The translations under genes and the position numbers were made by a program. From positions 186,001 through 250,000 of the IMG/VR virus record IMGVR_UViG_3300050120_000152: DNA of 64,000 nucleotides, one strand, 5' to 3'. Positions within the stretch are counted from its first letter, which is position 1; each line of letters starts with the position of its first letter. The notes under the pieces were generated by a model. That model had not been told where the DNA came from, did not search any database, and worked only from the letters and a program-made list of their open reading frames with translations. Below are positions 1,890 through 16,662 of this stretch, one piece after another.

Positions 1890-1917
1890 GGCTCATCATT
1901 TAATCATGGACACCAGC

Positions 1918-2553: not shown

Positions 2554-2560
2554 GTTCCTC

Positions 2561-2656
2561 ATGGAAACCTATTTCACTACTGAAGAACTTGCCCAAGCTG
2601 ATGCCATCCGTGCCGAGCTTGAAACCGCTGAATATCTGGACTATTCCCATGCATGA
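2561..2656 (+). CDS. small acidic protein (31 aa)
   Basis: METYFTTEELAQADAIRAELETAEYLDYSHA*; AGGAG upstream; overlaps the next ATG. Confidence 0.5.
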   Translation: METYFTTEELAQADAIRAELETAEYLDYSHA

Positions 2657-2969
2657 TACCCAAAAGAACTGTCGTGATCTGGCTGATCATCTGGAACATA
2701 ACGTAACGGATGCCGAGTATAATCAGAGCAGTTTTCATTGCGAATCTCGTAATACATCTTGTGCGGCTGGTCATGCTGCATGGGTTGGTATCGGTGGTTT
2801 GGTTATGGATGTATATGATGTTCCTTATCATACCGATTTCGTCAATAGTCTCAGTCGTTATGGAAAATCCATTATCACAGTTTTTGGCGAAGATAAACGA
2901 TATATTTTTCATAGTGATAGGGGTGATTTAACTCGATTGGATGCCATTGATTTGCTACGCAAGGCATAA
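2649..2969 (+). CDS. hypothetical protein
   Basis: Track ORF 2589..2969; likely start MHDTQK; FHCESRNTSCAAGHAA motif. Confidence 0.65.
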   Translation: MHDTQKNCRDLADHLEHNVTDAEYNQSSFHCESRNTSCAAGHAAWVGIGGLVMDVYDVPYHTDFVNSLSRYGKSIITVFGEDKRYIFHSDRGDLTRLDAIDLLRKA

Positions 2970-2971
2970 CC

Positions 2972-3070
2972 ATGATTCTCGACGTGAAAGACCTTACTCT
3001 GGATGTGAGCGTGGAGGAAGCTTTAACGCTCATACAGACGCTTACAATCATGCTGGCAGACCCGTCATAA
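2972..3070 (+). CDS. possible 32-aa ORF overlapping hairpins
   Basis: MILDVKDLTLDVSVEEALTLIQTLTIMLADPS*. Confidence 0.35.
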   Translation: MILDVKDLTLDVSVEEALTLIQTLTIMLADPS

Positions 3071-3210
3071 GGGTTATCAGCAAGTCGTTACTCAAACGCT
3101 TCCATTGATCGTACAGGACGGTTCCAAGCCTAATGGGGAACCTCGTTACATGACTGACTCATTTTGCCTGATGATGGAAAACAAAGGTTGACAAGCCTGT
3201 CCATTGGGGA

Positions 3211-3239
3211 TTGACACGGCAGTTTCTTTGTATTAGAAT
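3211..3239 (+). promoter_or_regulatory. sigma70-type early promoter
   Basis: TTGACA-17-TAGAAT. Confidence 0.75.
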
Positions 3240-3266
3240 GCTTGCCTACTATATAAGGATTTTATC

Positions 3267-3671
3267 ATGTTTGAACTCAATGCTGAACATCAAGCTATTG
3301 TCAAAGGCATGCGCGAATGCATGTTGCATGACTTTAAACGTGATGAAGTTTTTTGGAAAATGGTGGAACTCTGCCCATCGGTGTTCATCTTGGCATTGAA
3401 TGGTGGTATCATTCGTGTTGCATGGCCTGTTCATATTGCACCAACCATCGCAGATTTAGCCTCCGTGCCATGTCTGACCGATGGTGAATATAACATGCTG
3501 CGAAACCATTGCCACGCTAAAGATAAAGTCGCAGCCATCAAAGCATTGCGTGCTATGCGTGGCATGGCTTTGAAGGATGCAAAAGATATTGTGGAAGCAT
3601 GGTTCTATGAACCCGATTCAGACTATGGGAATTCATATTGGCGATTGAAACGGGTTCAGCCTGATGAATAG
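3267..3671 (+). CDS. protein with ribosomal L7/L12 C-terminal-like motif
   Basis: KVAAIKALRAMRGMALKDAKDIVE resembles the bL12 CTD (KI.vIK.vR.itglgLkeAKdlVe). Confidence 0.65.
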   Translation: MFELNAEHQAIVKGMRECMLHDFKRDEVFWKMVELCPSVFILALNGGIIRVAWPVHIAPTIADLASVPCLTDGEYNMLRNHCHAKDKVAAIKALRAMRGMALKDAKDIVEAWFYEPDSDYGNSYWRLKRVQPDE

Positions 3672-3849
3672 CATAGGCATGACCAATCTTTTCCTTTATG
3701 TTGGTGTAGGCTTTGCCATCTTTGATGCATTGTTTTTAATCGGTTATCTCTATGGTAATGACAGACGATACGGAACAGGTGCTGTCTGGAGTGGTGGCCT
3801 TGCATTGTTATGCTGGCTCATTGCTGGACTCATTGCATTCTTTACTTGA
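3664..3849 (+). CDS. small two-TM membrane protein
   Basis: Two hydrophobic segments; stop lies in the next TTGACA. Confidence 0.65.
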   Translation: MNSIGMTNLFLYVGVGFAIFDALFLIGYLYGNDRRYGTGAVWSGGLALLCWLIAGLIAFFT

Positions 3850-3875
3850 CAATCGCTGCGGACTTCTATTATAAT
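3846..3875 (+). promoter_or_regulatory. sigma70-type early promoter
   Basis: TTGACA-18-TATAAT. Confidence 0.7.
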
Positions 3876-3903
3876 AGCCTGAATTCCATACTGGATAGTG
3901 ATC

Positions 3904-4002
3904 ATGGCAAAACTTTCGGATAACCCCACGGGTGTTCATATCCTCATGGCTGTCATCGTGGTGTTACTCATCATCCCATTCTGCTGGATGACTGGTGTAT
4001 GA
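3904..4002 (+). CDS. small single-TM protein (32 aa)
   Basis: MAKLSDNPTGVHILMAVIVVLLIIPFCWMTGV*. Confidence 0.5.
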   Translation: MAKLSDNPTGVHILMAVIVVLLIIPFCWMTGV

Positions 4003-4103
4003 GACTGCGCATTTTTCCACATGAAGCTCCTAACAGCAAATGGTCTGAATATACGATCCCTTTGAATAATTTCAAAGAATATATTGACAACGTAATAAAA
4101 TAG
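3999..4103 (+). CDS. small hypothetical protein (34 aa)
   Basis: ATGA overlap with the previous gene; MRLRIFPHEAPNSKWSEYTIP... Confidence 0.45.
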   Translation: MRLRIFPHEAPNSKWSEYTIPLNNFKEYIDNVIK

Positions 4104-4111
4104 GGTATAAT
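4084..4111 (+). promoter_or_regulatory. sigma70-type early promoter
   Basis: TTGACA-16-TATAAT. Confidence 0.7.
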
Positions 4112-4138
4112 AAACCCATCATCAATAGGTGAACTGTC

Positions 4139-4312
4139 ATGAAAGTCAGAGAACTGATTGCCCTACTTCAAACATTCGATCCTGAGCTGGACGTTAACAA
4201 AACGGACAGTGCTGGTTGCAATGAATGTAATGAATTTGGTGACGATCATTTCAACGATATTTATGATGTACGCCTTTATGAGGTCTATCTAGACAAGCTA
4301 GTTGTATTGTAA
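4139..4312 (+). CDS. small phage protein (57 aa)
   Basis: MKVRELIALLQTFDPELDV..., a common small phage protein N-terminus. Confidence 0.65.
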   Translation: MKVRELIALLQTFDPELDVNKTDSAGCNECNEFGDDHFNDIYDVRLYEVYLDKLVVL

Positions 4313-4318
4313 TAGAAT
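4290..4318 (+). promoter_or_regulatory. sigma70-type early promoter
   Basis: TAGACA-17-TAGAAT. Confidence 0.65.
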
Positions 4319-4348
4319 ACTATTATTCCAACCAACTGAGACCATGTG

Positions 4349-4822
4349 ATGACTTCACCAGTTCGCGGGACGCATTATTCTCTCGCTCAATCTCCCGCTG
4401 AGATGTGGCAGAAAGCTGCTGCTATCGCTGCAAAGCTGATCGCTGATGCCAAAGCCCACAAGGCCATTCCGGTGCTGGCTTATACTGGCATGTCTGGGAC
4501 TGCAACGGCAACCGCAGTTTCGTTGTGGCTGGCAACGAAAAAGCCGAGATTCAAATTTTATATGATCTATGTTCGCAAGCCACGCGAAAAATCACATGGA
4601 AGAAAAATCGAACACAATTTCGAGTATGATTTTCTCATTGACGAAAGCATTACCAAAAAGAAATTTTTCATTGCTTTCGTGGATGATCTGATCTGTTCGG
4701 GTGCCACTAGCAAACGTGTACTAGCAAAAATTGCCGCAGAGTGCAAGACCACCAACTACATGCTGTTCACAAAATTGGCTGGTGCCGTGAACAATGAGGG
4801 ATACTGTACCAGCGATTACTAA
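4349..4822 (+). CDS. type I phosphoribosyltransferase-like protein
   Basis: PRPP-loop motif IAFVDDLICSGAT; YTGMSG loop. Confidence 0.7.
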   Translation: MTSPVRGTHYSLAQSPAEMWQKAAAIAAKLIADAKAHKAIPVLAYTGMSGTATATAVSLWLATKKPRFKFYMIYVRKPREKSHGRKIEHNFEYDFLIDESITKKKFFIAFVDDLICSGATSKRVLAKIAAECKTTNYMLFTKLAGAVNNEGYCTSDY

Positions 4823-4831
4823 AAAGAATGC

Positions 4832-4859
4832 TTGACATGGGCTAGAATTCTTTTATAAT
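4832..4859 (+). promoter_or_regulatory. sigma70-type early promoter
   Basis: TTGACA-16-TATAAT. Confidence 0.7.
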
Positions 4860-4890
4860 AGTCCCATACCAACCAACCCGGTCAAGCATC

Positions 4891-5091
4891 ATGATTTTTT
4901 CTACTGATACCAAAGCCTACGTCAATGAATTGTTTGCCGAAACTGCGGCTCATGAAGCGGCATATGCGGAAGCTGGTAATGTGATCATGGTGCCATCGCT
5001 TGAGGTCGAGTTCCCCATCGGTGAATTTCCTTACGATGATGCCGCATTCGAACGCCGTTATCCGCCATCCTATGATGTGGAGTCATTCTGA
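4891..5091 (+). CDS. small acidic hypothetical protein
   Basis: Track ORF directly after a promoter; coupled to 5091. Confidence 0.65.
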   Translation: MIFSTDTKAYVNELFAETAAHEAAYAEAGNVIMVPSLEVEFPIGEFPYDDAAFERRYPPSYDVESF

Positions 5092-5384
5092 TGGCTGTCC
5101 AGTATGAATGGGATGTGGAAACTGTCTCATGGGATGAAATCGACGGTGATCAAGTCATTGATCATTATCACTGTGTGACCTTCAAGGAAGCTCTACAACA
5201 GGCGGCGACAACTCCTGAAGATGGTTGTCGCCATGTTGTCGTGCTGGTGCGTGACGACGTTGCTGGAAGGCTCTGGGCCTATGTGGATGATATTGGTAGA
5301 ATATCGCCCATTTTCAGGGATAGTCAAGATAATGTGGCGATGTTGGTTCCTCAAAAATATCTCAGGGAAGTGTTGACAGCCTGA
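5091..5384 (+). CDS. hypothetical protein
   Basis: Track ORF; TGATG coupling. Confidence 0.7.
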   Translation: MAVQYEWDVETVSWDEIDGDQVIDHYHCVTFKEALQQAATTPEDGCRHVVVLVRDDVAGRLWAYVDDIGRISPIFRDSQDNVAMLVPQKYLREVLTA

Positions 5385-5400
5385 TTCATTCTGTTATAAT
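5373..5400 (+). promoter_or_regulatory. sigma70-type early promoter
   Basis: TTGACA-16-TATAAT. Confidence 0.7.
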
Positions 5401-5430
5401 ACATTCAACCAATCACTGAGAGTATCCACC

Positions 5431-5718
5431 ATGAACCGCAAGACTTATCACATGCGTCTGCTCGCCCTGCATGACTGTGTGAAGGCTGAAGACATTCTTT
5501 ATCCTAATAGAGGCATCTGCTTTAACGTGTCAAGTCTGGGTAAGACAGATTCCGCTGCTTTCAACTTGACGGACAAGTATGCAATGGGTTGGCCGGAACA
5601 TTCAGGCATCACAAACCGCCCTGTACCGTTCGAATATGGCGCTGACCTGAAATGGGTAGGCGAAGAAGGTGCATCGCGTCTGCGACTGCTGAACTATCTC
5701 ATTCGCAAGACGCGCTGA
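5431..5718 (+). CDS. hypothetical protein, paralogue of 1918..2256
   Basis: Shared motifs, see paralogue. Confidence 0.7.
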   Translation: MNRKTYHMRLLALHDCVKAEDILYPNRGICFNVSSLGKTDSAAFNLTDKYAMGWPEHSGITNRPVPFEYGADLKWVGEEGASRLRLLNYLIRKTR

Positions 5719-5722
5719 ATGC

Positions 5723-5751
5723 TTGACAGGATGATATAGTTCTATTAGAAT
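5723..5751 (+). promoter_or_regulatory. sigma70-type early promoter
   Basis: TTGACA-17-TAGAAT. Confidence 0.75.
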
Positions 5752-5782
5752 ACTCCCACACCATCCAACAAGGCTCAAGCCC

Positions 5783-6091
5783 ATGTCCATCCTGAATGCC
5801 ACCATCGCCACCATCGCCACCATCGCCACCATCGCCACCATCGCCTATTGGTTCAGCTTCCGTGGTGAAGATCAAGAAGTGCTGTGCCTGCGCGATGTTA
5901 ACAGCGATGGCCCGTGGCATGATGCCTTTGCCTATATCCATATCGTTACTAACGGCTCCTGCCGTCACGATGATCAACTGTACAACATCATGATGGAGCT
6001 TGCTGACTTGGCTGACAGTGCATCCATCTATGCGCTTGAAATCAGCGGCGACGTGGCCTATAACGAAGCCTATCGTGGGTTGGATGCTTGA
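5783..6091 (+). CDS. N-terminally anchored hypothetical protein with (ATI)n repeat
   Basis: Track ORF; follows a promoter and C/A-rich leader like its neighbours. Confidence 0.65.
   Translation: MSILNATIATIATIATIATIAYWFSFRGEDQEVLCLRDVNSDGPWHDAFAYIHIVTNGSCRHDDQLYNIMMELADLADSASIYALEISGDVAYNEAYRGLDA
5798..5845 (+). repeat. 9-bp tandem repeat (gccaccatc)x5 + gcc
   Basis: Read directly from the sequence. Confidence 0.95.
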
Positions 6092-6116
6092 CACTCTATA
6101 ATAATCCCTGTATACT
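6088..6116 (+). promoter_or_regulatory. sigma70-type early promoter
   Basis: TTGACA-17-TATACT; the -35 contains the upstream stop. Confidence 0.7.
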
Positions 6117-6143
6117 GCACCCATCATCAAGGGGAACTCTGCT

Positions 6144-6317
6144 ATGTCATCTGCCACTGTCGCCTCTCTCACCGCTGGACTGACGCTGTTCGCTATTGAA
6201 CAGTACAATGGTCACTGTAAGGCCGTGTACTCTGATGGACGTAAGCTCATCATCTCCTATGCTGACGCTGCTCGCCTATCTATGGCGCATACCGTTACCA
6301 TCCTCAACAAACGATAG
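6144..6317 (+). CDS. small hypothetical protein (57 aa)
   Basis: MSSATVASLTAGLTLFAIEQYNGHCKAVYSDGRKLII...; AAGGGG RBS. Confidence 0.55.
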   Translation: MSSATVASLTAGLTLFAIEQYNGHCKAVYSDGRKLIISYADAARLSMAHTVTILNKR

Positions 6318-6324
6318 GCCAATT

Positions 6325-6555
6325 ATGCTCACCCTGCTAACTATCTTCTATATCTGTGCTGCATCCTGTGCTATGGGCATACTGTGTGCTACACTGTGTA
6401 TCATCCTTGCCTCTGTCTTCACTGATGACAGACTGACCACTTCCATCCCTCAAGCATTCAAGCATACTGCCAAGCATCTGGGTTATTGGTCAATAGGTAC
6501 AGGCTGTGCTGCTATCGTAGCATATAGCATACTTATGTGTCAATGGTTGACATGA
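6325..6555 (+). CDS. small two-TM membrane protein
   Basis: 3' part of track ORF 6196..6555; two hydrophobic helices. Confidence 0.6.
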   Translation: MLTLLTIFYICAASCAMGILCATLCIILASVFTDDRLTTSIPQAFKHTAKHLGYWSIGTGCAAIVAYSILMCQWLT

Positions 6556-6956: not shown

Positions 6957-7574
6957 ATGAAACATAAAGTAATACATAATTGCAAATGTGGAGAAACTGA
7001 CTCTACCAAATTCTACAAATATAGAACATATGAATGTAAAACTTGTATAAGTAGAAAAAATAAAGATAATTCCAATTCTCGTAGACGATGTAGTTGTGGT
7101 GAATGCGATCCATTAATGTTTTATAAACGAAGATGTAGTAAGTGTAAGAAATGTACTCGTGAAGATAGAAAACAAGAATATAAAAATATAATGTCTGATG
7201 ATGCAAAGCGGCTAACCAAAATAGAATATAATATAGCTTATCAAAAAGCTAATATATTCAAATATAGATTAACATCAGCAAAACGAAGAGCCATGGATTG
7301 GGACAGAGAATTTGATCTTGACGAAAATTATTTAAAGGAATTATTTAAATACCAAAATGGTTGTTGTTGTTATAGTGGAATACCCTTTGATATAGATGAC
7401 AAGAATTTTACATGGTCTATAGATAGAGTAAATAGCGTCAAAGGTTATACTAAAGACAATGTAGTGTTGTGTACTAATATAATGAATATTATGAAAGGTA
7501 GTCTAACTATAGAAGAATTTTTGACTATTAGTAAAAAATTTATAGAATATCAAAATCATATTACAGGCTTTTAG
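6957..7574 (+). CDS. HNH-like homing endonuclease with N-terminal Cys clusters
   Basis: CxC/CxxC repeats; SIDRVNSVKGYTKDNVVLCTNIMNIMKG nuclease motif. Confidence 0.8.
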   Translation: MKHKVIHNCKCGETDSTKFYKYRTYECKTCISRKNKDNSNSRRRCSCGECDPLMFYKRRCSKCKKCTREDRKQEYKNIMSDDAKRLTKIEYNIAYQKANIFKYRLTSAKRRAMDWDREFDLDENYLKELFKYQNGCCCYSGIPFDIDDKNFTWSIDRVNSVKGYTKDNVVLCTNIMNIMKGSLTIEEFLTISKKFIEYQNHITGF

Positions 7575-7712: not shown

Positions 7713-7846
7713 ACTGTATACAAAGATTAAAGAATGCGAACAATATTAGAGAAGAATTGTCCCATAGACATATGAACTGGTTGACTAATTGAATTGTAAT
7801 CTGCTACACTTTTGGGGACTATAACTGTTTGGTGAGGAAGATGCCC

Positions 7847-8365
7847 ATGTTTGATTGGTTCAAGAAAGATGATAAGACGAAAGAGTCTAATAAGATAGTC
7901 GTTCCAAAAACATTGCAAGCGAATCAATATTTGGGTAATTATGTTGTAGCAGAATCCCGAGAAATGAGTACGATTATTTATGAGGGCGATGTACAAACAT
8001 GGTTAAAGAGTGGAACCCTGAATGAATTTTTTTATTGTCACGCTAGAATGATGAAAAATATGATCGGTGATTCTTATATTAAAGCATCCGATTCGTGTAT
8101 ATTATTTAATATGCATGATACTAAGGGTAAATCGCAAATGTTCAGATGGAATGCTACTCCATCAGCCGTAACGGGTAATTTATCGTGGTATAATGATATG
8201 CTCGCTCGCGTGGAGGATTTATCAGGTTTACCTATTGAAGAATTTACTCATGGAACCTTTCATTATTTGTCTGATCTGGAAATGAAAGAATTTTTGAATA
8301 AAAATTACGGTTCAACTACATCCGTGTTGTTTAATATGCCTTATGTAGGTATAACATATTTTTAA
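7847..8365 (+). CDS. 'IEEFT' paralogue family member 1
   Basis: WYNDMLARVEDLSGLPIEEFTHGTFHYL; ATG start after GAGGA. Confidence 0.8.
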   Translation: MFDWFKKDDKTKESNKIVVPKTLQANQYLGNYVVAESREMSTIIYEGDVQTWLKSGTLNEFFYCHARMMKNMIGDSYIKASDSCILFNMHDTKGKSQMFRWNATPSAVTGNLSWYNDMLARVEDLSGLPIEEFTHGTFHYLSDLEMKEFLNKNYGSTTSVLFNMPYVGITYF

Positions 8366-8378
8366 TGGTAGAAGAAGC

Positions 8379-8876
8379 ATGACATTACTAGATGATGACA
8401 GTATAGCACACAAGTACACAGAAACCTTGAAATTTTATAAGATTTACAATCGGATTGAAAAAATATTCAATCGGTTGAATTATAGTGATTTCACATTTTC
8501 CGATGCTTTTTCTTATAGTAAGATAAAGCGATCCATCATGAATTATCCTATGACACCTGATCTTAGACATGATTTTTCTTATGTGAGCAGAGATGGCAAT
8601 CATTATGGAATATCTTTTATTATTCAGGTAAGAGAAAATGAACATGCTAAAATGATGATGAGAGATACTTTAAATTTAAATATCAATAATGATCATGTTG
8701 CACTTATGATGGATGATAAGCATGGAGAAGCGGAGCATCTTATTAATTTATTGTTTCGATTTATTGAAAATATGACAGAAGTAACTATTGAAGAGTATTC
8801 AGAAGGTAGTTTGACCTACATGGATGATAGTAGATACAATGGGATATTTTTTGATGAAAGGTTTAGTGAATTATGA
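8379..8876 (+). CDS. 'IEEFT' family member 2
   Basis: FIENMTEVTIEEYSEGSLTYM; N-terminal LKFYKIYNRIEKIF. Confidence 0.8.
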   Translation: MTLLDDDSIAHKYTETLKFYKIYNRIEKIFNRLNYSDFTFSDAFSYSKIKRSIMNYPMTPDLRHDFSYVSRDGNHYGISFIIQVRENEHAKMMMRDTLNLNINNDHVALMMDDKHGEAEHLINLLFRFIENMTEVTIEEYSEGSLTYMDDSRYNGIFFDERFSEL

Positions 8877-8941
8877 CAGATGAAGGCATTACCATTGAAG
8901 AATTTATTAATTATACTATTAATTATAAGGATAAGAAATGA
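8873..8941 (+). pseudogene. relic of the family C-terminal motif
   Basis: 22-aa ORF MTDEGITIEEFINYTINYKDKK*. Confidence 0.3.
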
Positions 8942-9250
8942 AAGTTAAAATAACACACCAACAATTATTGGAATTACTGAGTATCGGCTTACGTAATCGT
9001 GGACTCACGGGAATCGAAATGTCTGATATGAAAGTTAGTTCTTTTTGTTTTATAAAAGGTGATTGGGATGATAGTGTAGAATTAACAATAATTCCGTACA
9101 ATGCTTGGGATAAGTAATATTTATTCGATTAAATTTTGTGAAGGACAACACCGTGGATTGTGATTTCACACAATAAAAACTGCCTAGTAAGATGGCGTTT
9201 TATATGTTAGACTTCTGGGATGGTTGAGAATATAGATTGGAAATATTTGT

Positions 9251-9646
9251 ATGTATGAAGACGAAATTAAATCAAATAACATGGATTTGGATTACATCAT
9301 TGCTAATCCAGAGCGAGCATATGAAGTAAGTTTTACTCATACATTAAGCAAAGATCTTTATATCAATGCGCTTAACTTTGAAGTTCAAATTAGCCAACGT
9401 GGCACTTACACACGTACTCCCTCGTTATCCATTACTGCGCTTCCAGCCGTCAAACGGCCGCTTTCAAACCAAAAATGTAACTATATCTTGTATGGTTTTA
9501 GTGAAGATATTATTAACTATAATGGCGGCATTATTAATTATCCAGGCCCAGAGAAATATAATAAGCTATTATCTATTGTTGAAGATATTACGGGAATTCC
9601 TATTGAGGAATATACTAAATATGCTTTTACCTATCACCCGGAATAA
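9251..9646 (+). CDS. 'IEEFT' family member 3 (family N-terminus absent)
   Basis: KYNKLLSIVEDITGIPIEEYTKYAFTY. Confidence 0.75.
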   Translation: MYEDEIKSNNMDLDYIIANPERAYEVSFTHTLSKDLYINALNFEVQISQRGTYTRTPSLSITALPAVKRPLSNQKCNYILYGFSEDIINYNGGIINYPGPEKYNKLLSIVEDITGIPIEEYTKYAFTYHPE

Positions 9647-9677
9647 TTTTTCTTTGTTTATTGCGATATTACTTATC

Positions 9678-10134
9678 ATGTCACTTAAATATAAAGAACC
9701 GTTAGAATTTTATAAAATGTACAATCGGATTGAGCGAGTATTGAGTTATGATTCAAAATTATATAGACCTTGAGTTTATGCTAGATCATCCCTGCGATAT
9801 CTACACGATTAATTTTTGTGTGGGTCGATCCGCTGGATATCTCATCAATAATATTACTCTGGAAGCCACCCCGCGTAAAGCACCTGTTTTTGGTGGGGTG
9901 CCATTCTTTGTTAATGTGTTACCACGTATTATTTTTATGGCTCTTGATATCTCAAAGAATGGTTCAAAGCATGTGGCAGGTATAATGACCCCTACAATAG
10001 AATATACATTAATGCAAGCTACTCACCCTTTGATCGGTGTAATCAAATATAATAAATTACTTTCTATTGTAGAAGATGCATTGGATGTATCTATAGAAGA
10101 ATTTACGCAAGGTGTATTTCATTATTTGGAGTAG
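9678..10134 (+). pseudogene. 'IEEFT' family member 4, split by a frameshift near 9750
   Basis: 9678..9773 encodes the family N-terminus (LEFYKMYNRIERV); 9748..10134 in the +1 frame encodes the rest (KYNKLLSIVEDALDVSIEEFTQGVFHYL). Confidence 0.6.
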
Positions 10135-10166
10135 GATTTTTTATTATCCTTATAGTATTATTAGGA

Positions 10167-11258
10167 TTATTGTTGTGCTTGTTGTTGCTTATGAATAGCA
10201 TCAAGAATTTTTCTAGTAGTTTTTTCTGCTTTATTAATTTCATTGATATCTGTAGCATCACCATATTTCTCAAAGCCGCTGGGCAAGCGATTTGCCTGCC
10301 GAAGGAACTCACTCAATGAACCTCTAATATAAATGCTGTACTTCAACAATTCTTCTTCGGGTTTAGTTAATAAATGCTTTATTAATTTTAAAGAATCCAT
10401 AACTAAACCAATATGATATCGAATATAAGAGGCATAGCAGTCTTTTTGTTTTTGCTTCAATTTTTCTATAGTTGCAGCATCCACGGCTTTGGGTAATTTT
10501 TCATCGTCTAAAGTCTTACCAATTTCTAAAAATGAATGATATGCTGCATTATCATTAACATGTTTATTTAATAACTCTTTAACAAACTCTGCTAATTTAG
10601 TATATACTGATGTATCTCGGGTTGATTGCACTTTTTCATGTTCACTAGCATCAAGAACGATATGCCATAATTCATTTTCGGATATACCTAATTCACTAGC
10701 CAATTCCATACGAGAAATTGTATTATCTCTTTCATCGAAACATTCAGTGTTTACATAATCGGCGTTACCTTTACCAATAGCAACTGCAAAACGTGTTCCA
10801 TGAGATTTATTAATAAAATAGATAAGAGTAATTCCGCGATCAAAATAGCTGTCGAAATAATTATCTGACTTAGTAGCTGCTGTACACCATTCAGTTCCCT
10901 TACCGTAGAAGCATGAGGCTCCTTTACTTAATGGAATAAGTGCTATCCAATCTCCAAATACTTTTAAAGTGATCGAATTACTTTTAACATCTTTCTTGGT
11001 TTGTTTTCCTGATGGGGTTATTTCTAATTGACGAACGAACTTATGAAGTTCTTCGAAGGGTTTTTTCATCCATTGGGTTATATCTTTATATTCTGGTTTG
11101 ATTCTGTTAGCGTTTAGTAATTGTTTAAATTTATTTAAGGTTTCATCAACGGTTACATCATCATTATCTTTAGAAAAGAGATTTTGAGCATCTTTAAAGG
11201 ATTCTGTTATGCTATAGGTTTCCACTAGATAATTAATAAAAGAGTAGGATAGTTTCAT
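10167..11258 (-). CDS. putative virion-packaged protein with ASCFYGKGTEWCT motif (PcfJ-like region)
   Basis: Motif common in jumbo-phage proteins; N-terminal LVE/ITE candidate maturation sites; TAAATA upstream. Confidence 0.6.
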   Translation of the reverse strand: MKLSYSFINYLVETYSITESFKDAQNLFSKDNDDVTVDETLNKFKQLLNANRIKPEYKDITQWMKKPFEELHKFVRQLEITPSGKQTKKDVKSNSITLKVFGDWIALIPLSKGASCFYGKGTEWCTAATKSDNYFDSYFDRGITLIYFINKSHGTRFAVAIGKGNADYVNTECFDERDNTISRMELASELGISENELWHIVLDASEHEKVQSTRDTSVYTKLAEFVKELLNKHVNDNAAYHSFLEIGKTLDDEKLPKAVDAATIEKLKQKQKDCYASYIRYHIGLVMDSLKLIKHLLTKPEEELLKYSIYIRGSLSEFLRQANRLPSGFEKYGDATDINEINKAEKTTRKILDAIHKQQQAQQ

Positions 11259-11447
11259 GGTATAATCGTGTTTACTATATTTAGATTTAATACTATATCA
11301 AGATGGTATATAATATAGGTAAGTTATGCTATGATATCTAATTGACTTAAGGAAAAATCGTTTAAATTCAGAAATTGTAACAAATACCATGCTTAGGTAT
11401 AGAGCTGAAAATAAAATTCTAAATAATAGACAACTGATGATCTATTT

Positions 11448-11801
11448 ATGACCGTATTATATCCCCTACAAGTAATTTTTTATAATAATTCTCTACAGGC
11501 TCCGTCTGAAGTTTCGATATCCCTACCCAATACTGTAGTAAATTCTTTTGTAATAGTTGCATGGGGTGATGGAACATCATCTAAAGTATATGGTGGTGTT
11601 GGCAACCGTATAGCACATTCCTACGGAAATCCTTCTCAACGTGCTGGATATACAGTAAGTGTTACGGGCGATGCGTCAACAGTAAGTTTTTATGATGCAA
11701 GCGGGGATCGTGCTACAGGTCAAATGGTGGGTTGGGGTAGTTATAATGTATCTAAAGTCATTATGCCTAATAATACGATAGTGACCACTCCCATCTCTTA
11801 A
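11448..11801 (+). CDS. stand-alone PKD-like domain protein
   Basis: AWGDG...HSYG...YTVSVTGD...WGSYNV matches the PKD-like module in 29278..30870 and 46641..48797. Confidence 0.7.
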   Translation: MTVLYPLQVIFYNNSLQAPSEVSISLPNTVVNSFVIVAWGDGTSSKVYGGVGNRIAHSYGNPSQRAGYTVSVTGDASTVSFYDASGDRATGQMVGWGSYNVSKVIMPNNTIVTTPIS

Positions 11802-11834
11802 TACTTCCACATTTATCATTCATGTGATAGAATC

Positions 11835-12401
11835 ATGCCTAATCTTATTAAGGTATGGAATATTAGAATGAAACATTCTCAAATAGATAGTCAATCTAAA
11901 TTAGATAAAATTATAAAATCCCAAGAATATATTAAACACATTGAGTATGTGTCTGAAATTTATGGTAAAATCCATAATATATTTGAGAAACAGTCATCAA
12001 AGATATTAATAGAATATAATACACCTATTGATTCTATGGTTGTTGTATTAAATCAGATGCCAATTTATAAAGATGATATAGAATGGTTTAACAATTCATT
12101 AGAATTCATTGAAAATCAATTGAACATATCCATTGAAGATTTTACACATGGTAGTTTTCACTATGTAAATGAAAATGACGAATCAAAATTGCTTAGTAGA
12201 TATACGGCATCCGATATCATGGCTCAAATGGAGACGTTTGTTGGTTATTCTAAAATGCTTAGTAAGCAATATTTTATGGATTACTATTTAAATACACCTA
12301 TTGATTTCATAGATTATTCAGATCAGTATGAAAAATTTTGTAAAGAACAACATGATATAGACGTTATCGATAAAGTTATTAAACAAGTGAATGACTTATA
12401 A
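11835..12401 (+). CDS. 'IEEFT' family member 5
   Basis: FIENQLNISIEDFTHGSFHYV; N-terminal IYGKIHNIF. Confidence 0.8.
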   Translation: MPNLIKVWNIRMKHSQIDSQSKLDKIIKSQEYIKHIEYVSEIYGKIHNIFEKQSSKILIEYNTPIDSMVVVLNQMPIYKDDIEWFNNSLEFIENQLNISIEDFTHGSFHYVNENDESKLLSRYTASDIMAQMETFVGYSKMLSKQYFMDYYLNTPIDFIDYSDQYEKFCKEQHDIDVIDKVIKQVNDL

Positions 12402-12808
12402 TGAAATATTATTTCGACAAAGAAATAGGTGAGCAATTATTAAAAATCTCATCAGAAATACGACAAATATATTTCACTGAAAATGGATATACATCGCCTC
12501 GTCCATTGGGATCGGTTGAGGGATACATTGAAGATTCTAAACATGCTTTTATAAATTTTATTATGTTGGATGATAGTGTTTATTGTCTAGACAATTTAAT
12601 GTATAATATCTATGATATAGAAATATATAACACTATTCTTACTTTAGTAGAAGAGTTGTTGCAAATTTCAATAGAAGAATTTACTAATAATAGATTTACA
12701 TATTTAACTATTGATAATGTAAATGATATGCTTAATGATTGTAATGAACAATACACCTTTTATGCACCATATATCCCTTTACACCGCGCCCGGCAACTTT
12801 TACAGTAA
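12401..12808 (+). CDS. 'IEEFT' family member 6
   Basis: YNTILTLVEELLQISIEEFTNNRFTYL. Confidence 0.8.
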   Translation: MKYYFDKEIGEQLLKISSEIRQIYFTENGYTSPRPLGSVEGYIEDSKHAFINFIMLDDSVYCLDNLMYNIYDIEIYNTILTLVEELLQISIEEFTNNRFTYLTIDNVNDMLNDCNEQYTFYAPYIPLHRARQLLQ

Positions 12809-12836
12809 TAGATATCTAATTCAAATAGGCGACATT

Positions 12837-13265
12837 ATGAATTTTGTAACAGAAATATTGAATAAATTATATGAAACCTATGAGACATGTGATATCGAAA
12901 TATTACATAGTAAAGGTATAAAAAGATTTCATACTTCAAACTGGCGCGCTGATATGCGAGAATCAAAAGTTTCTGAGTTGCAGATGGAAATATTATCATT
13001 TAAATATTTGCCAGAAGAAAAGTTGAATATATTCATAAGATTAAAGTCAAACTCAATAAAATTTTGGATAAAATCTGGTAAAAAAATTACAGAACACCGA
13101 CTCGATGAATATGATATGAGTTTTAGTTCTTATTATAATCAATTAATTGAAATAGTAGAAAATATAATACAAGAACCTGTGGAAGAATTCACCGATAAAA
13201 ATATAAAATTTATAGAACCGCCGAAGTTTAAACCTGATAGACTTTCGCGACAAGAATATGAATAG
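12837..13265 (+). CDS. 'IEEFT' family member 7
   Basis: YNQLIEIVENIIQEPVEEFTDKNIKFI; start chosen after the upstream stop. Confidence 0.75.
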   Translation: MNFVTEILNKLYETYETCDIEILHSKGIKRFHTSNWRADMRESKVSELQMEILSFKYLPEEKLNIFIRLKSNSIKFWIKSGKKITEHRLDEYDMSFSSYYNQLIEIVENIIQEPVEEFTDKNIKFIEPPKFKPDRLSRQEYE

Positions 13266-13800
13266 ACCCAGAACAAATACACCATTGGAGCGCTATATCG
13301 ATATATTCGACAGAACTAAATCAACCGTTAATGGAATTGATTTTATCAAACAGTATTCTATGGATAAAGAAGATAGGTATAATCGTCTATCTTATTTTAT
13401 AAACATTACTGCTTATTTACATGGCGGTGAAAGTGATACCCTAGTTGTTAAATTCAATAAAAATAAAATAATGGTATGGTTAACATCTAATATTTACTCA
13501 GTAATAACTCAAGAACCTTATAGTTATGCGTTATTTGCCCAAGATTATCAAAATTTAATAACCTTAGTGGAAGATTTGTCAAAAACCTCGGTTGAAGAAT
13601 TTTCATATGATAAAATTACTTACCTAACAGATAAAGAATTGGAAGAATATGTTGCAATTTTTAAAGCAGATATAAATGACCAAATAGAATATAGTTTGTC
13701 TAATATGTTAGTAAAAGAAATAAATAATAATATGATTGATGACATATTCGCATCAATGTCTAAAAAACCATCAAAATATAATAGCGCTACCAATTTCTAA
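13258..13800 (+). CDS. 'IEEFT' family member 8
   Basis: YQNLITLVEDLSKTSVEEFSYDKITYL. Confidence 0.8.
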   Translation: MNRPRTNTPLERYIDIFDRTKSTVNGIDFIKQYSMDKEDRYNRLSYFINITAYLHGGESDTLVVKFNKNKIMVWLTSNIYSVITQEPYSYALFAQDYQNLITLVEDLSKTSVEEFSYDKITYLTDKELEEYVAIFKADINDQIEYSLSNMLVKEINNNMIDDIFASMSKKPSKYNSATNF

Positions 13801-13875
13801 CATGAATAGCAGCGTGTCATCCTGTTGTCTTTTATTCCTATGTAGTATAAACTGTTGGCTCAATAGAACTATTTT

Positions 13876-14238
13876 ATGAATATAAAAATATTAAACATGT
13901 CTGCTCCTTTCATGGTTATGGAAGATGTGATATTCAATCCTCGTAATACCCACCACTATGATACTATTAGTTATAATTATATTGACAAAAAATTAGAATT
14001 TATGGTGGATATTATTTCTAATAATATCCATGTCGATACTTTAATAATTTTATTGCATAATGATAAAATTAAAGTATCTATGTTATCCAAGTATGCAGAT
14101 TATATAGTGATGACCTCCGATAATTTTAAATATCAATCCTATATTAGACGATTGACGAAAATCATTGAAGAACAGACGGGAAAATCATTAACGGATTTTA
14201 CCACATCTATCAATGTTTCAATGATGCCGCCTTTATGA
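13876..14238 (+). CDS. 'IEEFT' family member 9 (divergent)
   Basis: YIRRLTKIIEEQTGKSLTDFT. Confidence 0.7.
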   Translation: MNIKILNMSAPFMVMEDVIFNPRNTHHYDTISYNYIDKKLEFMVDIISNNIHVDTLIILLHNDKIKVSMLSKYADYIVMTSDNFKYQSYIRRLTKIIEEQTGKSLTDFTTSINVSMMPPL

Positions 14239-14618
14239 TTAATCTTGTTGACGAATTAGAAGCATACATAAATTCTATAAAAAATATGTCTGCTGAAGAA
14301 CTAAAAAAATCTAATTTAGATATTGTATTTGGTAAATTATTATATTCTACTGCCGATACTGTTGTACTAGTTAATACCATAGAAATACATGAACTAAACC
14401 TTAGATTAATATTAAACATAAGCGGAGTCCCAACAGTCATTCTACGAGACGGACACTTAAACTTTAGTTGTTCTGATAAAGATTTAGATAAATTAGTTTT
14501 TATAATTGACGATATTTACGCCATATGCGAAAATGTTACGGAAGTTAGTATTGCCGATATAACTAATGATATGTTTGACTATCGTAGTTTATCACATCTC
14601 ACATTTAATGTAGGATAA
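14235..14618 (+). CDS. 'IEEFT' family member 10 (divergent)
   Basis: IYAICENVTEVSIADITNDMFDY. Confidence 0.65.
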   Translation: MINLVDELEAYINSIKNMSAEELKKSNLDIVFGKLLYSTADTVVLVNTIEIHELNLRLILNISGVPTVILRDGHLNFSCSDKDLDKLVFIIDDIYAICENVTEVSIADITNDMFDYRSLSHLTFNVG

Positions 14619-14699: not shown

Positions 14700-15446
14700 A
14701 TGAAAATTATAGAACGCATAAAACAGAGACTAAAAATGATTACCGATAAGAAAACGTTCAGAGATACCATGTATGATTACGCAAATATCAATGAATATTA
14801 TTCATTTTTCGGCAATGTCATCTACATATCAACCGATTATTTAGAATCTAATGACTATTTTATTATTCTAAAAAATTACAACAAGTTTGCCCTTGTGACC
14901 ATTTCCAAGGAAAATTTATTAAGATTTAGAAATTTTCAAAATAGAGATAACTTGATCGCAGAATTAGAAGCCTTGGCACCTACAATTCAATATGTTGAAG
15001 GTTATAATAACTTTATTCCAAAGATAGGATGGTATCTGCAAAATACTTATTTCAACAATCATTCTCGTAATGAATTGATATCATTAAAAAACAGCTCATT
15101 TGTATCGTGGAACTTGGTTAACGTTGAAAATTTGGTCAATTTCCATAGAAAAAATAAGACGGTTTCAACAAAACAGTTCTTACATGAAACTAGACAATTG
15201 AATCCTGAAATTTATACATCATTAGTCACTGTGGTCAATATATATAACTCACAATTTACGTTAACCTTTGATTGGGTAGCTGGCAATCCATTTTTTGAGT
15301 TAAGTATTTACCACTTCAATTATAAAATGGTTAAACGATTATATCTTTATGATCTTATGGAATTGAGTGATTTATTTGCTATCATGACAAACAATGATGA
15401 TTATCAATCTTTACAAGCTATTGACGCCTTCAAAGCTGCTGCTTGA
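14700..15446 (+). CDS. hypothetical protein
   Basis: 248-aa ORF; no recognised motif. Confidence 0.75.
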   Translation: MKIIERIKQRLKMITDKKTFRDTMYDYANINEYYSFFGNVIYISTDYLESNDYFIILKNYNKFALVTISKENLLRFRNFQNRDNLIAELEALAPTIQYVEGYNNFIPKIGWYLQNTYFNNHSRNELISLKNSSFVSWNLVNVENLVNFHRKNKTVSTKQFLHETRQLNPEIYTSLVTVVNIYNSQFTLTFDWVAGNPFFELSIYHFNYKMVKRLYLYDLMELSDLFAIMTNNDDYQSLQAIDAFKAAA

Positions 15447-15471
15447 TTAACTGAGTTACATCCTTTATACT
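15443..15471 (+). promoter_or_regulatory. sigma70-type promoter
   Basis: TTGATT-17-TATACT; the -35 contains the upstream stop. Confidence 0.6.
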
Positions 15472-15498
15472 TATACACTTACTTAAGAGAGATACTGA

Positions 15499-16662
15499 AT
15501 GGGCGATATCGTATACACCTACAATAGAGATGCGGGTGATTTGGCTCTTACATACATGAATTGTTATTATGACAATTTTGGATGTATGTATAATCATACC
15601 TATAGACGTTCAATCCAATTAGAAAGTAAAATTGCTTTCCAAAAACTTCAACCAGTCATGGAGTTTAATGATTATGGTATTACTTTTGAAAAAACAATTA
15701 CTTCTATTATTCGTGGATTAAATACTTTAGCCTATGAAGATGACGATGAAGATGGGTTTTCGGATGTAGATTTATCGACAGATTATCTAGATCATATCTA
15801 CATGTTCAATAATTCCGATAAAATTGGTATTTGTATCAATTATAATAATAACGGTCAGCACTATTTGGAAATGGCTGTCACCTATGTAGAAGAAAAAAGT
15901 AAAGAAGCCGCTATGCGCGCTTTCAATTATTTGGATGCCATGCTTTCAAAGTATACCAAAATCAAAAACACCAAAAAACGTGTAAATTTCATCTGCCAAT
16001 CGCCGTCCGGCCTATTTCTTCAAGAAATGGTACTCAAAACAAATATAAATTTCGACATCGAAAATCATTATAATGATGATTTTAAAGAAGTTTCTGATAA
16101 AATTCTCGCGTCTTTGGATAAAAACTCCAAAAAAGGTATTATTTTGCTACATGGCAAGCATGGTACTGGAAAAACGACTTATTTACGATATTTGATCAAT
16201 AATTTAGAAAAAAATATCATCTACGTGTCGCCGGATATGAGTTCTAGGGTGTCAGAACCTTCATTTTTGACTTTCTTATTGAAGCATAAGAATAGTATTC
16301 TTATCATTGAAGATGCTGAAAATGTCATTAAGACTCGTGAAGCTGGAGAAAATCAGGCGGTATCCAATTTATTGAATATTACTGATGGTATTTTGGGCGA
16401 TGGTCTTAATTTCCAGATTATTTGTACATTCAATACCAATTTCGATCAAATTGATCCAGCTTTGAAACGTAAAGGTCGAATGATTGCACAATATGAGTTC
16501 AAAAATTTGACTGTTGATAAAACTGCCAATTTAGTCAACCATTTATACGGCGAAGATGCTATTGTTCCCGATTCCGAAATGAGTTTAGCCGAAATTTTCA
16601 ATATGAATGAAGATAATTACGACAAAAAAGTAGTAAAACAAACATTTGGATTCAATAGATAA
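15499..16662 (+). CDS. AAA+ ATPase
   Basis: Walker A GKHGTGKT, Walker B ILIIEDAE, sensor TFN, ALKRKGR arginine finger. Confidence 0.9.
   Translation: MGDIVYTYNRDAGDLALTYMNCYYDNFGCMYNHTYRRSIQLESKIAFQKLQPVMEFNDYGITFEKTITSIIRGLNTLAYEDDDEDGFSDVDLSTDYLDHIYMFNNSDKIGICINYNNNGQHYLEMAVTYVEEKSKEAAMRAFNYLDAMLSKYTKIKNTKKRVNFICQSPSGLFLQEMVLKTNINFDIENHYNDDFKEVSDKILASLDKNSKKGIILLHGKHGTGKTTYLRYLINNLEKNIIYVSPDMSSRVSEPSFLTFLLKHKNSILIIEDAENVIKTREAGENQAVSNLLNITDGILGDGLNFQIICTFNTNFDQIDPALKRKGRMIAQYEFKNLTVDKTANLVNHLYGEDAIVPDSEMSLAEIFNMNEDNYDKKVVKQTFGFNR

What the first reader, a model, noticed from the sequence alone, without database searches (positions are those of the whole stretch)
7847..14618. Tandem expansion of ~10 paralogues sharing an unrecognised 'Y..L...VE......IEEFT.G.F.Y' module
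Seen: ten co-oriented 120-190 aa ORFs share a C-proximal motif (e.g. VEDLSGLPIEEFTHGTFHYL, VEDALDVSIEEFTQGVFHYL, VEELLQISIEEFTNNRFTYL). Several also share an N-terminal FY..Y.RIE.IF helix. The middles are highly divergent, and relic or frameshifted copies lie among them. I do not recognise the family. Inference: a conserved docking module plus a variable specificity region under birth-and-death evolution, as expected for anti-defence, immunity or adaptor repertoires. This may be an undescribed system.
Basis: partly seen in the sequence, partly recalled or inferred. Interest (0 to 1): 0.78.

Follow-up and report, generated by a model that had tools for sequence, protein, structure and literature searches.

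The report
Unnamed small-protein family in jumbo phages
A giant phage from peat carries a row of at least nine old, very divergent copies of a small protein that matches no described family, and a few relatives end in pieces copied from the phage's own capsid protein; what the family does is unknown.

Summary
The window is part of a 340-kb jumbo myophage with a T4-type capsid protein, assembled from a peat metagenome.

Between 7841 and 14618, eight ORFs are robustly related (leave-one-out HMM E 1e-6 to 1e-10). A ninth, K, is a weaker but significant member. The tenth, J, is not statistically supported. An eleventh copy lies outside the window, next to the scaffold and capsid genes.

The motif (YN.LL.(I/V)ED....SIEEFT.G.F.Y) is the best-predicted part of one ~110-aa alpha+beta domain, not a separable peptide. 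Pfam, PHROGs, NCBIfam, PADLOC, PDB sequences and four structure libraries give no match.

HMMER over 1.84 billion proteins finds 44 relatives, all 103-200 aa. Contigs of related uncultured jumbo phages carry arrays of 5 to about 20 copies, three of them in the same genomic slot. The paralogues are ancient, not recent.

Some members carry C-terminal tails homologous to conserved capsid-protein segments. This is certain for one outside relative, probable for the group that includes window gene I, and only suggestive for G. These members lie downstream of a late-type promoter.

Function is unknown. My best guess is accessory binding proteins, some of which mimic capsid-protein segments. This is a new family of moderate interest.

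The parts
7841..8365 (+). Member A (174 aa from the ATG; a TTG at 7829 is an alternative start). Motif at 8183-8269. 31-aa tail ending 'NMPYVGITYF'.
   Evidence: Leave-one-out HMM E 9e-10; motif HMM E 6e-17.
8379..8876 (+). Member B (165 aa). Motif at 8739-8822. N-terminal 'LKFYKIYNRIEKIF' helix.
   Evidence: Leave-one-out HMM E 9e-6.
8870..8938 (+). Possible relic of a motif ('GITIEEFINYTINY'), in a different frame from B.
   Evidence: Motif-only HMM E 0.023 within the region; weak.
8938..9117 (+). 59-aa ORF. Not a family member; conserved inside the arrays of L007 and L031.
   Evidence: tblastn E 1.5e-9 and 2e-9.
9251..9646 (+). Member D (131 aa). Motif at 9551-9634. The protein ends 3 residues after the motif.
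   Evidence: Leave-one-out HMM E 5.5e-10.
9678..9773 (+). Relic of a B-like N-terminus ('LEFYKMYNRIERVL'). It is out of frame with E and overlaps E's start.
9748..10134 (+). Member E (128 aa). Motif at 10045-10128. No tail.
   Evidence: Leave-one-out HMM E 1e-9; 28.6% identity to D over 126 aa.
10167..11258 (-). 363-aa gene on the opposite strand (phrog_28193 / phrog_17056, unknown function). It interrupts the array in this genome; no counterpart was found in the other loci searched.
   Evidence: no homologue in L025, L007, L031 or L032.
11418..11425 (+). TCTAAATA, a one-mismatch version of the phage's late promoter NATAAATA, 22 nt upstream of the 117-aa ORF.
   Evidence: The exact ATAAATA sits at the same place in L007, L043 and L031.
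11448..11801 (+). 117-aa conserved beta-rich ORF, PKD-like as a lead only. It heads the second half of the array.
   Evidence: 65-68% identity in L007 and L031 and a homologue in L043. Atlas neighbours are phage PKD/DUF285 clusters at 0.90-0.92. No Pfam or PDB hit.
11835..12401 (+). Member F (188 aa). Motif at 12081-12167. 77-aa tail.
   Evidence: Leave-one-out HMM E 6e-10. The tail shows no significant similarity to the capsid protein.
12401..12808 (+). Member G (135 aa). Motif at 12620-12706. The tail contains 'FYAPYIPL' (12758-12781), 7 of 8 identical to the capsid-protein block 'FYCPYIPL'.
   Evidence: Leave-one-out HMM E 1e-9; AlphaFold pLDDT 83. Tail against the capsid protein: z 5.7, capsid-profile E 0.045. 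Suggestive only.
12837..13265 (+). Member H (142 aa from the ATG at 12837). Motif at 13128-13214. Orthologues are P0010 and the L007 gene at 8483.
   Evidence: Leave-one-out HMM E 9e-6; tree pair with SH-aLRT 90.
13258..13800 (+). Member I (180 aa). Motif at 13543-13626. The tail is predicted as one 44-residue helix, and 13666-13758 resembles the capsid protein's long conserved helix (own capsid protein residues 248-275).
   Evidence: Leave-one-out HMM E 3.5e-6; AlphaFold. Tail against the capsid protein: z 4.1, capsid-profile E 0.035. The similarly tailed P0032 and P0043 score 3e-4 and 1e-3 in the same capsid region.
13876..14238 (+). J (120 aa). Membership not shown. It has an orthologue at L007 10018-10383.
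   Evidence: E 5 when its pair is excluded from the model; tree pair with SH-aLRT 98.
14235..14618 (+). Member K (127 aa), divergent. Motif at 14523-14582.
   Evidence: E 2e-4 with its group excluded; motif HMM E 4e-6.
14700..16662 (+). 248-aa ORF plus a BCS1-like AAA+ ATPase. Both lie directly downstream of the array here, in G001 and in L043.
   Evidence: Neither is related to the family (hhalign).

Best explanation
What is shown. This is an undescribed, ancient multigene family of small, mostly acidic, single-domain alpha+beta proteins. It is confined, as far as seen, to a clade of uncultured AT-rich jumbo myophages with a T4-type capsid protein. Each member has one N-terminal helix, a 3-5-stranded beta-meander, and a C-terminal long helix, short helix and strand that carries the motif. 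The motif is the conserved core of the fold, with a nearly invariant Glu and an acidic IEE patch. The sheet and loops vary, and some members add a C-terminal tail. The family is dispensable for building this type of capsid, because the nearest cultured relatives lack it.

What is inferred. The members are accessory binding proteins. The conserved C-terminal element would engage one common partner or simply hold the fold. The variable sheet and tails would give each copy its own target. A subset carries tails copied from the most conserved segments of the capsid protein and lies downstream of a late-type promoter. These members would act by mimicking those segments, competing for whatever binds them. 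Candidates are host sensors of the capsid protein, EF-Tu or a chaperone, or neighbouring capsid subunits.
For: Family and fold:
- Leave-one-out and exclusion HMM tests support nine window members plus the copy next to the capsid gene.
- There are 44 outside relatives, all 103-200 aa.
- The motif is conserved over 87 distinct members: Glu in 85/86, Asn in 75/78, Ile in 79/85.
- Two AlphaFold models have the same order of elements, and the motif is the most confident part.
- No known family or fold matches.

Age, accessory nature and distribution:
- Cross-genome orthologue pairs exist and no within-window sisters.
- The array occupies the same slot upstream of the 248-aa ORF and the AAA ATPase in G000, G001 and L043.
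- The family is absent from XacN1 and RAS14, whose capsid proteins are 62-66% identical to this phage's.
- Most members are acidic, pI 4.3-6.

Capsid-derived tails:
- P0026 matches Pfam Gp23 at E 2.8e-8 and the capsid-protein profile at 1e-11. It aligns to T4 gp23 residues 98-130.
- P0032 and P0043 score 3e-4 and 1e-3; window genes I and G score 0.035 and 0.045. The next family protein scores 0.85, and every hit falls in the tail.

Expression signals:
- NATAAATA behaves as the late promoter of this phage.
- In four arrays, it or a one-mismatch version precedes the 117-aa ORF that heads the tail-bearing half.
Against: There is no functional evidence of any kind. No partner is identified.

The tail similarity for the window's own genes (I and G) is marginal. 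In an unbiased search of the whole phage proteome, only P0026 is significant. P0032 and P0043 have the capsid protein as best hit, but at E ~0.1.

Most members, including all 13 in the G001 array, have no tail. Capsid mimicry therefore cannot be the family's general mechanism.

Expression timing rests on promoter-like motifs only. G001 shows no ATAAATA in its array or in the fetched locus around its capsid gene.

A conserved motif that is the core of the fold need not be a binding site at all.
Confidence: 0.4

Rival explanations
1. Capsid-associated accessory proteins: internal head, decoration or assembly factors. The conserved domain would target them to the prohead or the capsid lattice. 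The capsid-like tails would insert beside, or replace, the corresponding capsid-protein elements.
For: - Some tails are homologous to conserved capsid-protein blocks.
- The tail-bearing half of the array follows a late-type promoter and a PKD-like small ORF, a domain type common on virion surfaces (the last point from general knowledge).
- One family copy lies next to the scaffold and capsid genes in two genomes.
- 'IVE' and 'IEE' in the motif fit the loose (L/I)-x-E site of T4-type prohead proteases (from memory).
Against: - The copy next to the capsid gene sits in a separate unit with a sigma70-like promoter, and a strong terminator closes it before the scaffold's late promoter.
- Genes A-E have no late-type motif.
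- Relatives with a 62-66% identical capsid protein lack the family.
- Most members have no tail.
- The N-termini are not conserved, so there is no T4-like capsid-targeting sequence.
- The (L/I)-x-E pattern is too loose to carry weight.
Confidence: 0.25
2. Adaptors or substrates of the adjacent BCS1-like AAA+ ATPase. The shared C-terminal motif would dock on the ATPase, and the variable part would bring different clients.
For: The array lies directly upstream of the 248-aa ORF and the AAA+ ATPase in G000, G001 and L043. The ATPase belongs to the classical AAA type, PF00004, E 3e-13.
Against: These three phages are related, so shared gene order is inherited and is not independent evidence. The ATPase is present in RAS14, CM1 and PA5oct-like phages; of these, RAS14 was searched with the family profile and lacks the family. 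L051 carries family copies in another slot, one that matches G000 143-155 kb. The family also has a copy 180 kb away in G000.
Confidence: 0.1
3. Neutral leftovers of old duplications, with no shared present-day function.
For: The paralogues are extremely divergent. Small relics are present and one member may be frameshifted. Copy number varies between phages.
Against: All nine members have intact ORFs. Motif positions are nearly invariant over 87 proteins from at least six contigs. Orthologues are retained across phages. The gene packing is compact and operon-like.
Confidence: 0.05

Closest known systems
T4 internal proteins (IPI, IPII, IPIII) and their hyperplastic locus
   Same: Both are clusters of small, fast-diverging accessory phage proteins that keep one short conserved element while the rest varies. 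Both belong to phages with a gp23-type capsid protein. (From general knowledge of T4.)
   Different: In T4 the conserved element is a ~10-aa N-terminal capsid-targeting sequence that the prohead protease removes. Here it is a ~27-aa C-terminal helix-strand that is part of the fold, and the N-termini are not conserved. There is no sequence or profile similarity. Virion location is unknown here.
Gol region of T4 gp23 and the Lit protease
   Same: The tail of the outside relative P0026 aligns to T4 gp23 residues 98-130 (16 of 33 identical). This overlaps the region I recall as Gol, residues 93-122. The review PMC3014915 describes Gol as a 29-residue stretch, the most conserved part of gp23, which binds EF-Tu and lets Lit cleave it.
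   Different: Here the segment is appended to an unrelated small domain, as a separate 161-aa gene in the middle of an array. It is not in the window. Whether it binds EF-Tu or any sensor is untested.
DSAD1 against DSR2 (a phage protein that counters a sensor of a structural protein)
   Same: It is a precedent for a small phage protein that counteracts a defence triggered by a virion protein (abstract of PMC11087589).
   Different: As far as I know, DSAD1 is not built from a piece of the trigger. There is no similarity to this family, and no defence system is linked to this family.
Lineage-specific multigene families in accessory regions of jumbo phages
   Same: Co-oriented arrays of small paralogues sit in a slot that holds other small genes in relatives. 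RAS14 has unrelated small ORFs upstream of the same ATPase.
   Different: This family is not in PHROGs or Pfam. It is unusually old and keeps gene order across phages. Some members carry capsid-derived tails.

Membership tests
The family itself (YN.LL.(I/V)ED....SIEEFT.G.F.Y proteins) | Significant match to a family profile built without the tested protein. | tested here: met
   Eight ORFs score E 9e-6 to 5e-10. K scores 2e-4, and the copies next to the capsid gene score 7e-6 to 2e-4. J fails with E 5.
The family itself | Members share one predicted fold. | tested here: met
   G and I both give helix, beta-meander, long helix carrying the motif, then a short helix, at pLDDT 83 and 78. Only two members were modelled, and coordinates were not superposed.
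Any family in Pfam-A, PHROGs v4, NCBIfam or PADLOC | Profile match at or near the curated cut-off. | tested here: not met
   No hit reaches a family's curated cut-off, and no family recurs across the ten ORFs. Among the 52 aligned members, only the Gp23 hit of P0026's tail is significant.
Gp23 major capsid protein family (PF07068) | A match that covers the HK97-type capsid domain. | tested here: not met
   P0026 scores 34 bits against a cut-off of 24.4, but over only 36 of the 376 profile positions. The window genes I and G give only marginal tail matches. The family core does not align to the capsid protein (hhalign probability 0.4%).
T4-type internal head proteins | A conserved N-terminal capsid-targeting sequence followed by a protease site. 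| tested here: not met
   The N-termini are not conserved in the alignments of 10 and 52 members.
T4-type internal head proteins | Presence in the virion. | not testable with these tools
   The phage is uncultured and comes from a peat metagenome. No proteomics data exist for it.
Known solved or predicted folds (PDB, BFVD, AlphaFold DB clusters, ESM Atlas) | A structural match above noise. | tested here: not met
   Foldseek gives no match at E <= 1e-3. The best VIA-align Z is 4.5, where 7-8 is typical of unrelated best hits. Atlas TM-scores are <= 0.42.
Adaptors of the neighbouring AAA+ ATPase | Strict co-occurrence with the ATPase. | tested here: not met
   The ATPase occurs in RAS14, which lacks the family, and in PA5oct-like phages. 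The family occurs in another slot in L051.
Anti-defence proteins | Inhibition of a defence system. | not testable with these tools
   An experiment is needed.

The most novel reading that the evidence does not exclude
Some members are carriers that display copies of the most conserved capsid-protein segments: the Gol-like N-terminal block, the long helix, and the 'FYxPY(I/V)PL' strand. They would act as competitive decoys for host immune sensors, or other host factors, that recognise those segments. They would blunt capsid-triggered abortive infection while the real capsid protein accumulates. This would be a counter-defence built from fragments of the trigger itself.
Probability: 0.12. Interest if true: 0.85.

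Novelty: new variant of a known kind. Interest (0 to 1): 0.55.

Why it matters
Jumbo phages devote much of their genomes to arrays of small unknown genes. This array is a clean, well-bounded example. It is one fold with one nearly invariant C-terminal element, at least 87 distinct members, and conserved gene order across several uncultured phages. That makes it a good target for structure determination and interaction screens.

The capsid-derived tails are the unusual part. Capsid proteins are among the commonest triggers of bacterial immunity, for example CapRel, Thoeris, CBASS and Lit (review PMC13728456; PMC3014915). That review and two literature searches did not turn up a phage protein built from fragments of the trigger.

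If the tails work as mimics, that would be a new counter-defence principle, or a new way of regulating capsid assembly. If they do not, the family is still a new protein family of unknown function in environmental jumbo phages.

Tried and rejected
- Megablast of the region and tblastn of a near-consensus member against 50,697 phage records found nothing.
- The word-indexed search of 5.8 billion proteins found only the window's own proteins.
A back-translated motif pattern was used instead. That pattern also hit proteins I take, from memory, to be 2-oxoglutarate dehydrogenase E1-like ('STIEEFTEGQFQYVI'); I treat these as chance.
- The family core as a piece of the capsid protein: rejected (hhalign).
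- The 248-aa ORF or the ATPase N-domain as hidden family members: rejected.
- Tails copied from other phage proteins: a search of all G000 ORFs gave only chance-level hits apart from the capsid protein.
- My first inference that the whole array is early was wrong. It used the exact 8-mer TATAAATA only. The real motif is NATAAATA, and it (or a one-mismatch form) precedes the 117-aa ORF.
- The sigma70 and terminator consensus scan of the region was uninformative in this AT-rich DNA.
- Rfam and tRNA scans of the window were empty.
- The ESM Atlas feature search for member E gave scores <= 0.63, which is noise.
- Sequencing runs: only DNA runs from peat hold the sequence and no RNA run does.
- dN/dS was not attempted, because orthologues are too divergent for synonymous sites to be informative.


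Full report
CONTEXT

The window is bases 186,001-250,000 of a 340,344-bp virus record with direct terminal repeats, estimated complete. The genome is AT-rich, about 28-36% GC over most of the window. It has a T4-type major capsid protein at genome 12,947-14,353 (Pfam Gp23 E 1e-96).

By capsid protein, the nearest cultured phages are Xanthomonas phages XacN1 and Xoo-sp13 and Stenotrophomonas phages CM1 and RAS14, at 62-66% identity. Ralstonia RsoM2USA follows at 47%, and further jumbo phages such as Escherichia phage EJP2 (Asteriusvirus) and Pseudomonas phage PA5oct at about 40%. The only public runs that hold the sequence are peat metagenomes. The rest of the window encodes nucleotide-metabolism genes (ribonucleotide reductase, topoisomerase II, an IMPDH/GMP-reductase-like protein), homing endonucleases and several large proteins of unknown function.

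The ORFs and the quoted motif strings are there. BLASTP all-against-all shows similarity almost only in a ~27-aa C-proximal block. D and E are the exception, with 28.6% identity over 126 aa.

Leave-one-out HMMs were scored against all 4,662 stop-to-stop ORFs of the genome. They recover eight ORFs at E 9e-6 to 5e-10, while the best non-members score 0.002-0.4. With a larger profile, and with the tested group excluded, the results are:
- K (14235-14618) is a member, E 2e-4.
- J (13876-14238) is not supported, E 5.

So there are nine supported members in the window, not ten.

The 'FY..Y.RIE.IF' N-terminal helix occurs only in B and in an out-of-frame fragment at 9678-9773, just upstream of E. A second possible relic, a degenerate motif, lies at 8870-8938.

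The remaining ORFs inside the span are not relics:
- The 59-aa ORF (8938-9117) and the 117-aa ORF (11448-11801) are conserved inside the arrays of other phages. The 117-aa ORF is 65-68% identical there, far more than the family members are to each other.
- The 363-aa minus-strand gene is an insertion not found in the other arrays searched.

THE FAMILY OUTSIDE THE WINDOW

Pfam, PHROGs, NCBIfam, PADLOC and a profile search of PDB sequences give nothing. HMMER over 1.84 billion representative proteins finds 44 outside relatives at E 3e-9 to 1e-3, all 103-200 aa. No member is fused to a larger protein.

Where the genomic context could be fetched, the genes are again in co-oriented tandem arrays:
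- About 20 copies on a 39.6-kb ENA contig (L007).
- 13 copies in a complete 350-kb IMG/VR genome (G001).
- 5 copies each on two JGI contigs (L043 and L051).
- Fragments on two short Logan contigs.

In G000, G001 and L043 the array sits directly upstream of homologues of the same 248-aa ORF and BCS1-like AAA+ ATPase. In L051 the copies occupy a different slot, one that matches G000 143-155 kb.

XacN1 and RAS14 have no family member at E <= 1. RAS14 does keep the ATPase and GMP reductase, with other small ORFs upstream.

G000 and G001 each have one more copy immediately upstream of the scaffold and capsid genes. In G000 this is genome 11,353-11,757. The profile scores, with the pair excluded, are 7e-5 to 2e-4 for G000 and 7e-6 for G001.

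Over 87 distinct members the block reads Y-N-x-(L/I)-(L/I)-x-(I/L)-(I/V)-E-(D/N)-x4-(S/P)-I-E-E-F-T-x-G-x-F-x-Y-(L/I). Glu is present in 85/86, Asn in 75/78 and Ile in 79/85.

AGE OF THE COPIES

A maximum-likelihood tree of 45 members from three phages is poorly resolved, with terminal branches above 1 change per site. No window copy is sister to another window copy. Several pair across genomes: H with L007-8483 (SH-aLRT 90), J with L007-10018 (98), E with L007-3198, and B with L007-7496. The only young cluster is a triplet in L007. The array is therefore an old set of paralogues that keeps its gene order, with some lineage-specific gain and loss. It is not a recent burst.

STRUCTURE

AlphaFold2 with the family alignment gives confident models for two members: G (pLDDT 83, pTM 0.72) and I (pLDDT 78, pTM 0.67). 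Both have the same order of elements:
- an N-terminal helix;
- an antiparallel beta-meander of 3-5 strands;
- a long helix (YN..LL..VED);
- a short helix (IEEF);
- an extended segment (T.G.F.Y).

The motif is the most confident part of each model, with block means of 91-98 and 93. It is thus the closing element of one ~110-aa domain, not a detachable peptide.

No fold search returned a match above noise:
- Foldseek against PDB, BFVD and AlphaFold DB clusters.
- The ESM Atlas shape search.
- VIA-align over 48,161 PDB chains; the best Z is 4.5, against a typical 7-8 for unrelated best hits.

Most members are acidic.

CAPSID-DERIVED TAILS (NEW)

About a fifth of the members continue 20-78 residues beyond the motif. 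One outside relative, P0026, is a complete 161-aa gene in the middle of the L007 array. It matches Pfam Gp23 at E 2.8e-8 over profile positions 8-43.

I built a profile of seven capsid proteins and scored it against 60 family proteins. The six best hits are all tails:

| Protein | E-value |
|---|---|
| P0026 | 1e-11 |
| P0032 | 3e-4 |
| P0043 | 1e-3 |
| Window I | 0.035 |
| Window G | 0.045 |
| P0047 | 0.095 |
| Next best family protein | 0.85 |

(shuffle z-scores 4-18.)

The tails fall on three capsid-protein blocks:
- Own capsid protein residues 62-97, matched by P0026.
- Residues 242-278, matched by P0032, P0043 and window I.
- Residues 396-426, matched by P0047 and window G. G keeps only 'FYAPYIPL', which is 7 of 8 identical to 'FYCPYIPL'.

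P0026 aligns to T4 gp23 residues 98-130. This overlaps what I recall as the Gol peptide, residues 93-122. A review describes Gol as a 29-residue stretch, the most conserved part of gp23, which binds EF-Tu and lets the Lit protease cleave it (PMC3014915).

There are caveats:
- In an unbiased search of all G000 ORFs, only P0026 is significant. P0032 and P0043 have the capsid protein as top hit, but at E ~0.1.
- The evidence for the window's own I and G is marginal. It leans on the similarly tailed relatives P0032, P0043 and P0047, which match the same capsid blocks; gene order, not the tree, suggests these are their counterparts in other phages.
- The G001 array has no tails at all.
- The family core is not related to the capsid protein.

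From general knowledge of the HK97 fold, the three blocks look like elements of the capsid protein's peripheral (P) domain. I did not test this.

EXPRESSION SIGNALS

In G000 the 8-mers TATAAATA, AATAAATA, CATAAATA and GATAAATA are strongly tied to gene starts. Between 37% and 56% of all their copies lie 15-35 nt upstream of a gene start, where 1.4% would be expected. One of them precedes the scaffold gene. This is the T4-type late promoter, an identification from general knowledge.

Within the arrays, the only such motif sits 17-28 nt upstream of the 117-aa ORF in L007, L043 and L031. The window has the one-mismatch TCTAAATA at 22 nt. No terminator is predicted between that ORF and F-K.

So the second half of the array is probably transcribed late. 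It holds the 117-aa ORF and F-K here, and all tail-bearing members in L007 and L031. A-E have no late-type motif.

The copy next to the capsid gene belongs to a unit that starts with TTGCAT-17-TATAAT. A strong terminator ends that unit before the scaffold's late promoter. All of this is inference from motifs. No RNA data exist.

The 117-aa ORF has phage PKD/DUF285 clusters as its nearest neighbours in the ESM Atlas, at 0.90-0.92. It has no Pfam or PDB match. I treat this as a lead only.

INTERPRETATION

The descriptive part is secure. This is a new, old, lineage-specific family of small single-domain proteins, accessory to a clade of uncultured jumbo phages. The function is open.

I put 0.4 on accessory binding proteins whose variable sheet and tails set the target, with a subset that mimics capsid-protein segments. 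I put 0.25 on true capsid-associated proteins, 0.1 on adaptors of the neighbouring AAA+ ATPase, and 0.05 on functionless leftovers.

The most novel reading not excluded is that the tailed members are decoys for capsid-sensing immunity (probability 0.12). Capsid proteins are frequent triggers of defence (PMC13728456). A phage protein that counters a sensor of a structural protein is known, DSAD1 against DSR2 (PMC11087589). In that review and in two literature searches I found no counter-defence built from fragments of the trigger.

Noticed in passing
window 1-6500: This island has 42-46% GC against 28-36% in the rest of the window. It holds only small ORFs. Two paralogues (1861-2256 and 5431-5718) share a '...LLN(H/Y)LIR(M/K)TR' end. 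Two further paralogues look secreted (835-1110 and 1406-1663). There is also a phosphoribosyltransferase-like ORF (4346-4822). The island may be a foreign insertion.
   Followed up: partly
window 5798-5845: A perfect 9-bp tandem repeat (GCCACCATC, 5.3 copies) lies inside overlapping ORFs on both strands.
   Followed up: no
window 11448-11801: This 117-aa ORF is 65-68% identical in two other phage arrays (L007, L031), with a further homologue in L043, and is preceded by the late-promoter motif in each. Its ESM Atlas neighbours are phage PKD/DUF285 clusters, but it has no Pfam or PDB hit. It may be a small virion-surface protein.
   Followed up: partly
whole genome G000; window examples at 21878, 46604 and 58082 (+) and 32837 (-): NATAAATA behaves as the late promoter. 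Between 37% and 56% of all copies lie 15-35 nt upstream of a gene start. In the window it marks several large ORFs of unknown function.
   Followed up: yes
window 14700-16662: A 248-aa ORF with no homologue in cultured phages is followed by a BCS1-like AAA+ ATPase. The ATPase is conserved in RAS14, CM1 and PA5oct-like jumbo phages. The pair is always directly downstream of the family array.
   Followed up: partly
window 6957-7574: This 205-aa Cys-rich HNH/endonuclease VII-like ORF also matches the PHROGs annotated 'Srd anti-sigma factor' and 'decoy of host sigma70'. A late-promoter-like CTAAATA lies 20 nt upstream.
   Followed up: no
window 29278-30870 (-) and 41958-52002 (+): Five large ORFs fall into two paralogous sets that share unknown-function PHROGs: 29278-30870 and 46641-48797 share phrog_17273, 22899, 3649 and 35701, while 41958-44198, 44222-46471 and 48850-52002 share phrog_5490. 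They may be fibre-like late proteins.
   Followed up: no
G000 genome 9,600-10,000 (L028 4616-4990): Two tRNA-like sequences with GGTTCGA(A/T)TCC arms, followed by a terminator, lie upstream of the operon that ends with the family copy next to the capsid gene. This is outside the window and was not run through a tRNA finder.
   Followed up: no
L007 8001-8486 (outside the window): P0026 is a family domain plus a 33-residue copy of the Gol-like, most conserved block of the T4-type capsid protein. It is an independent gene.
   Followed up: yes
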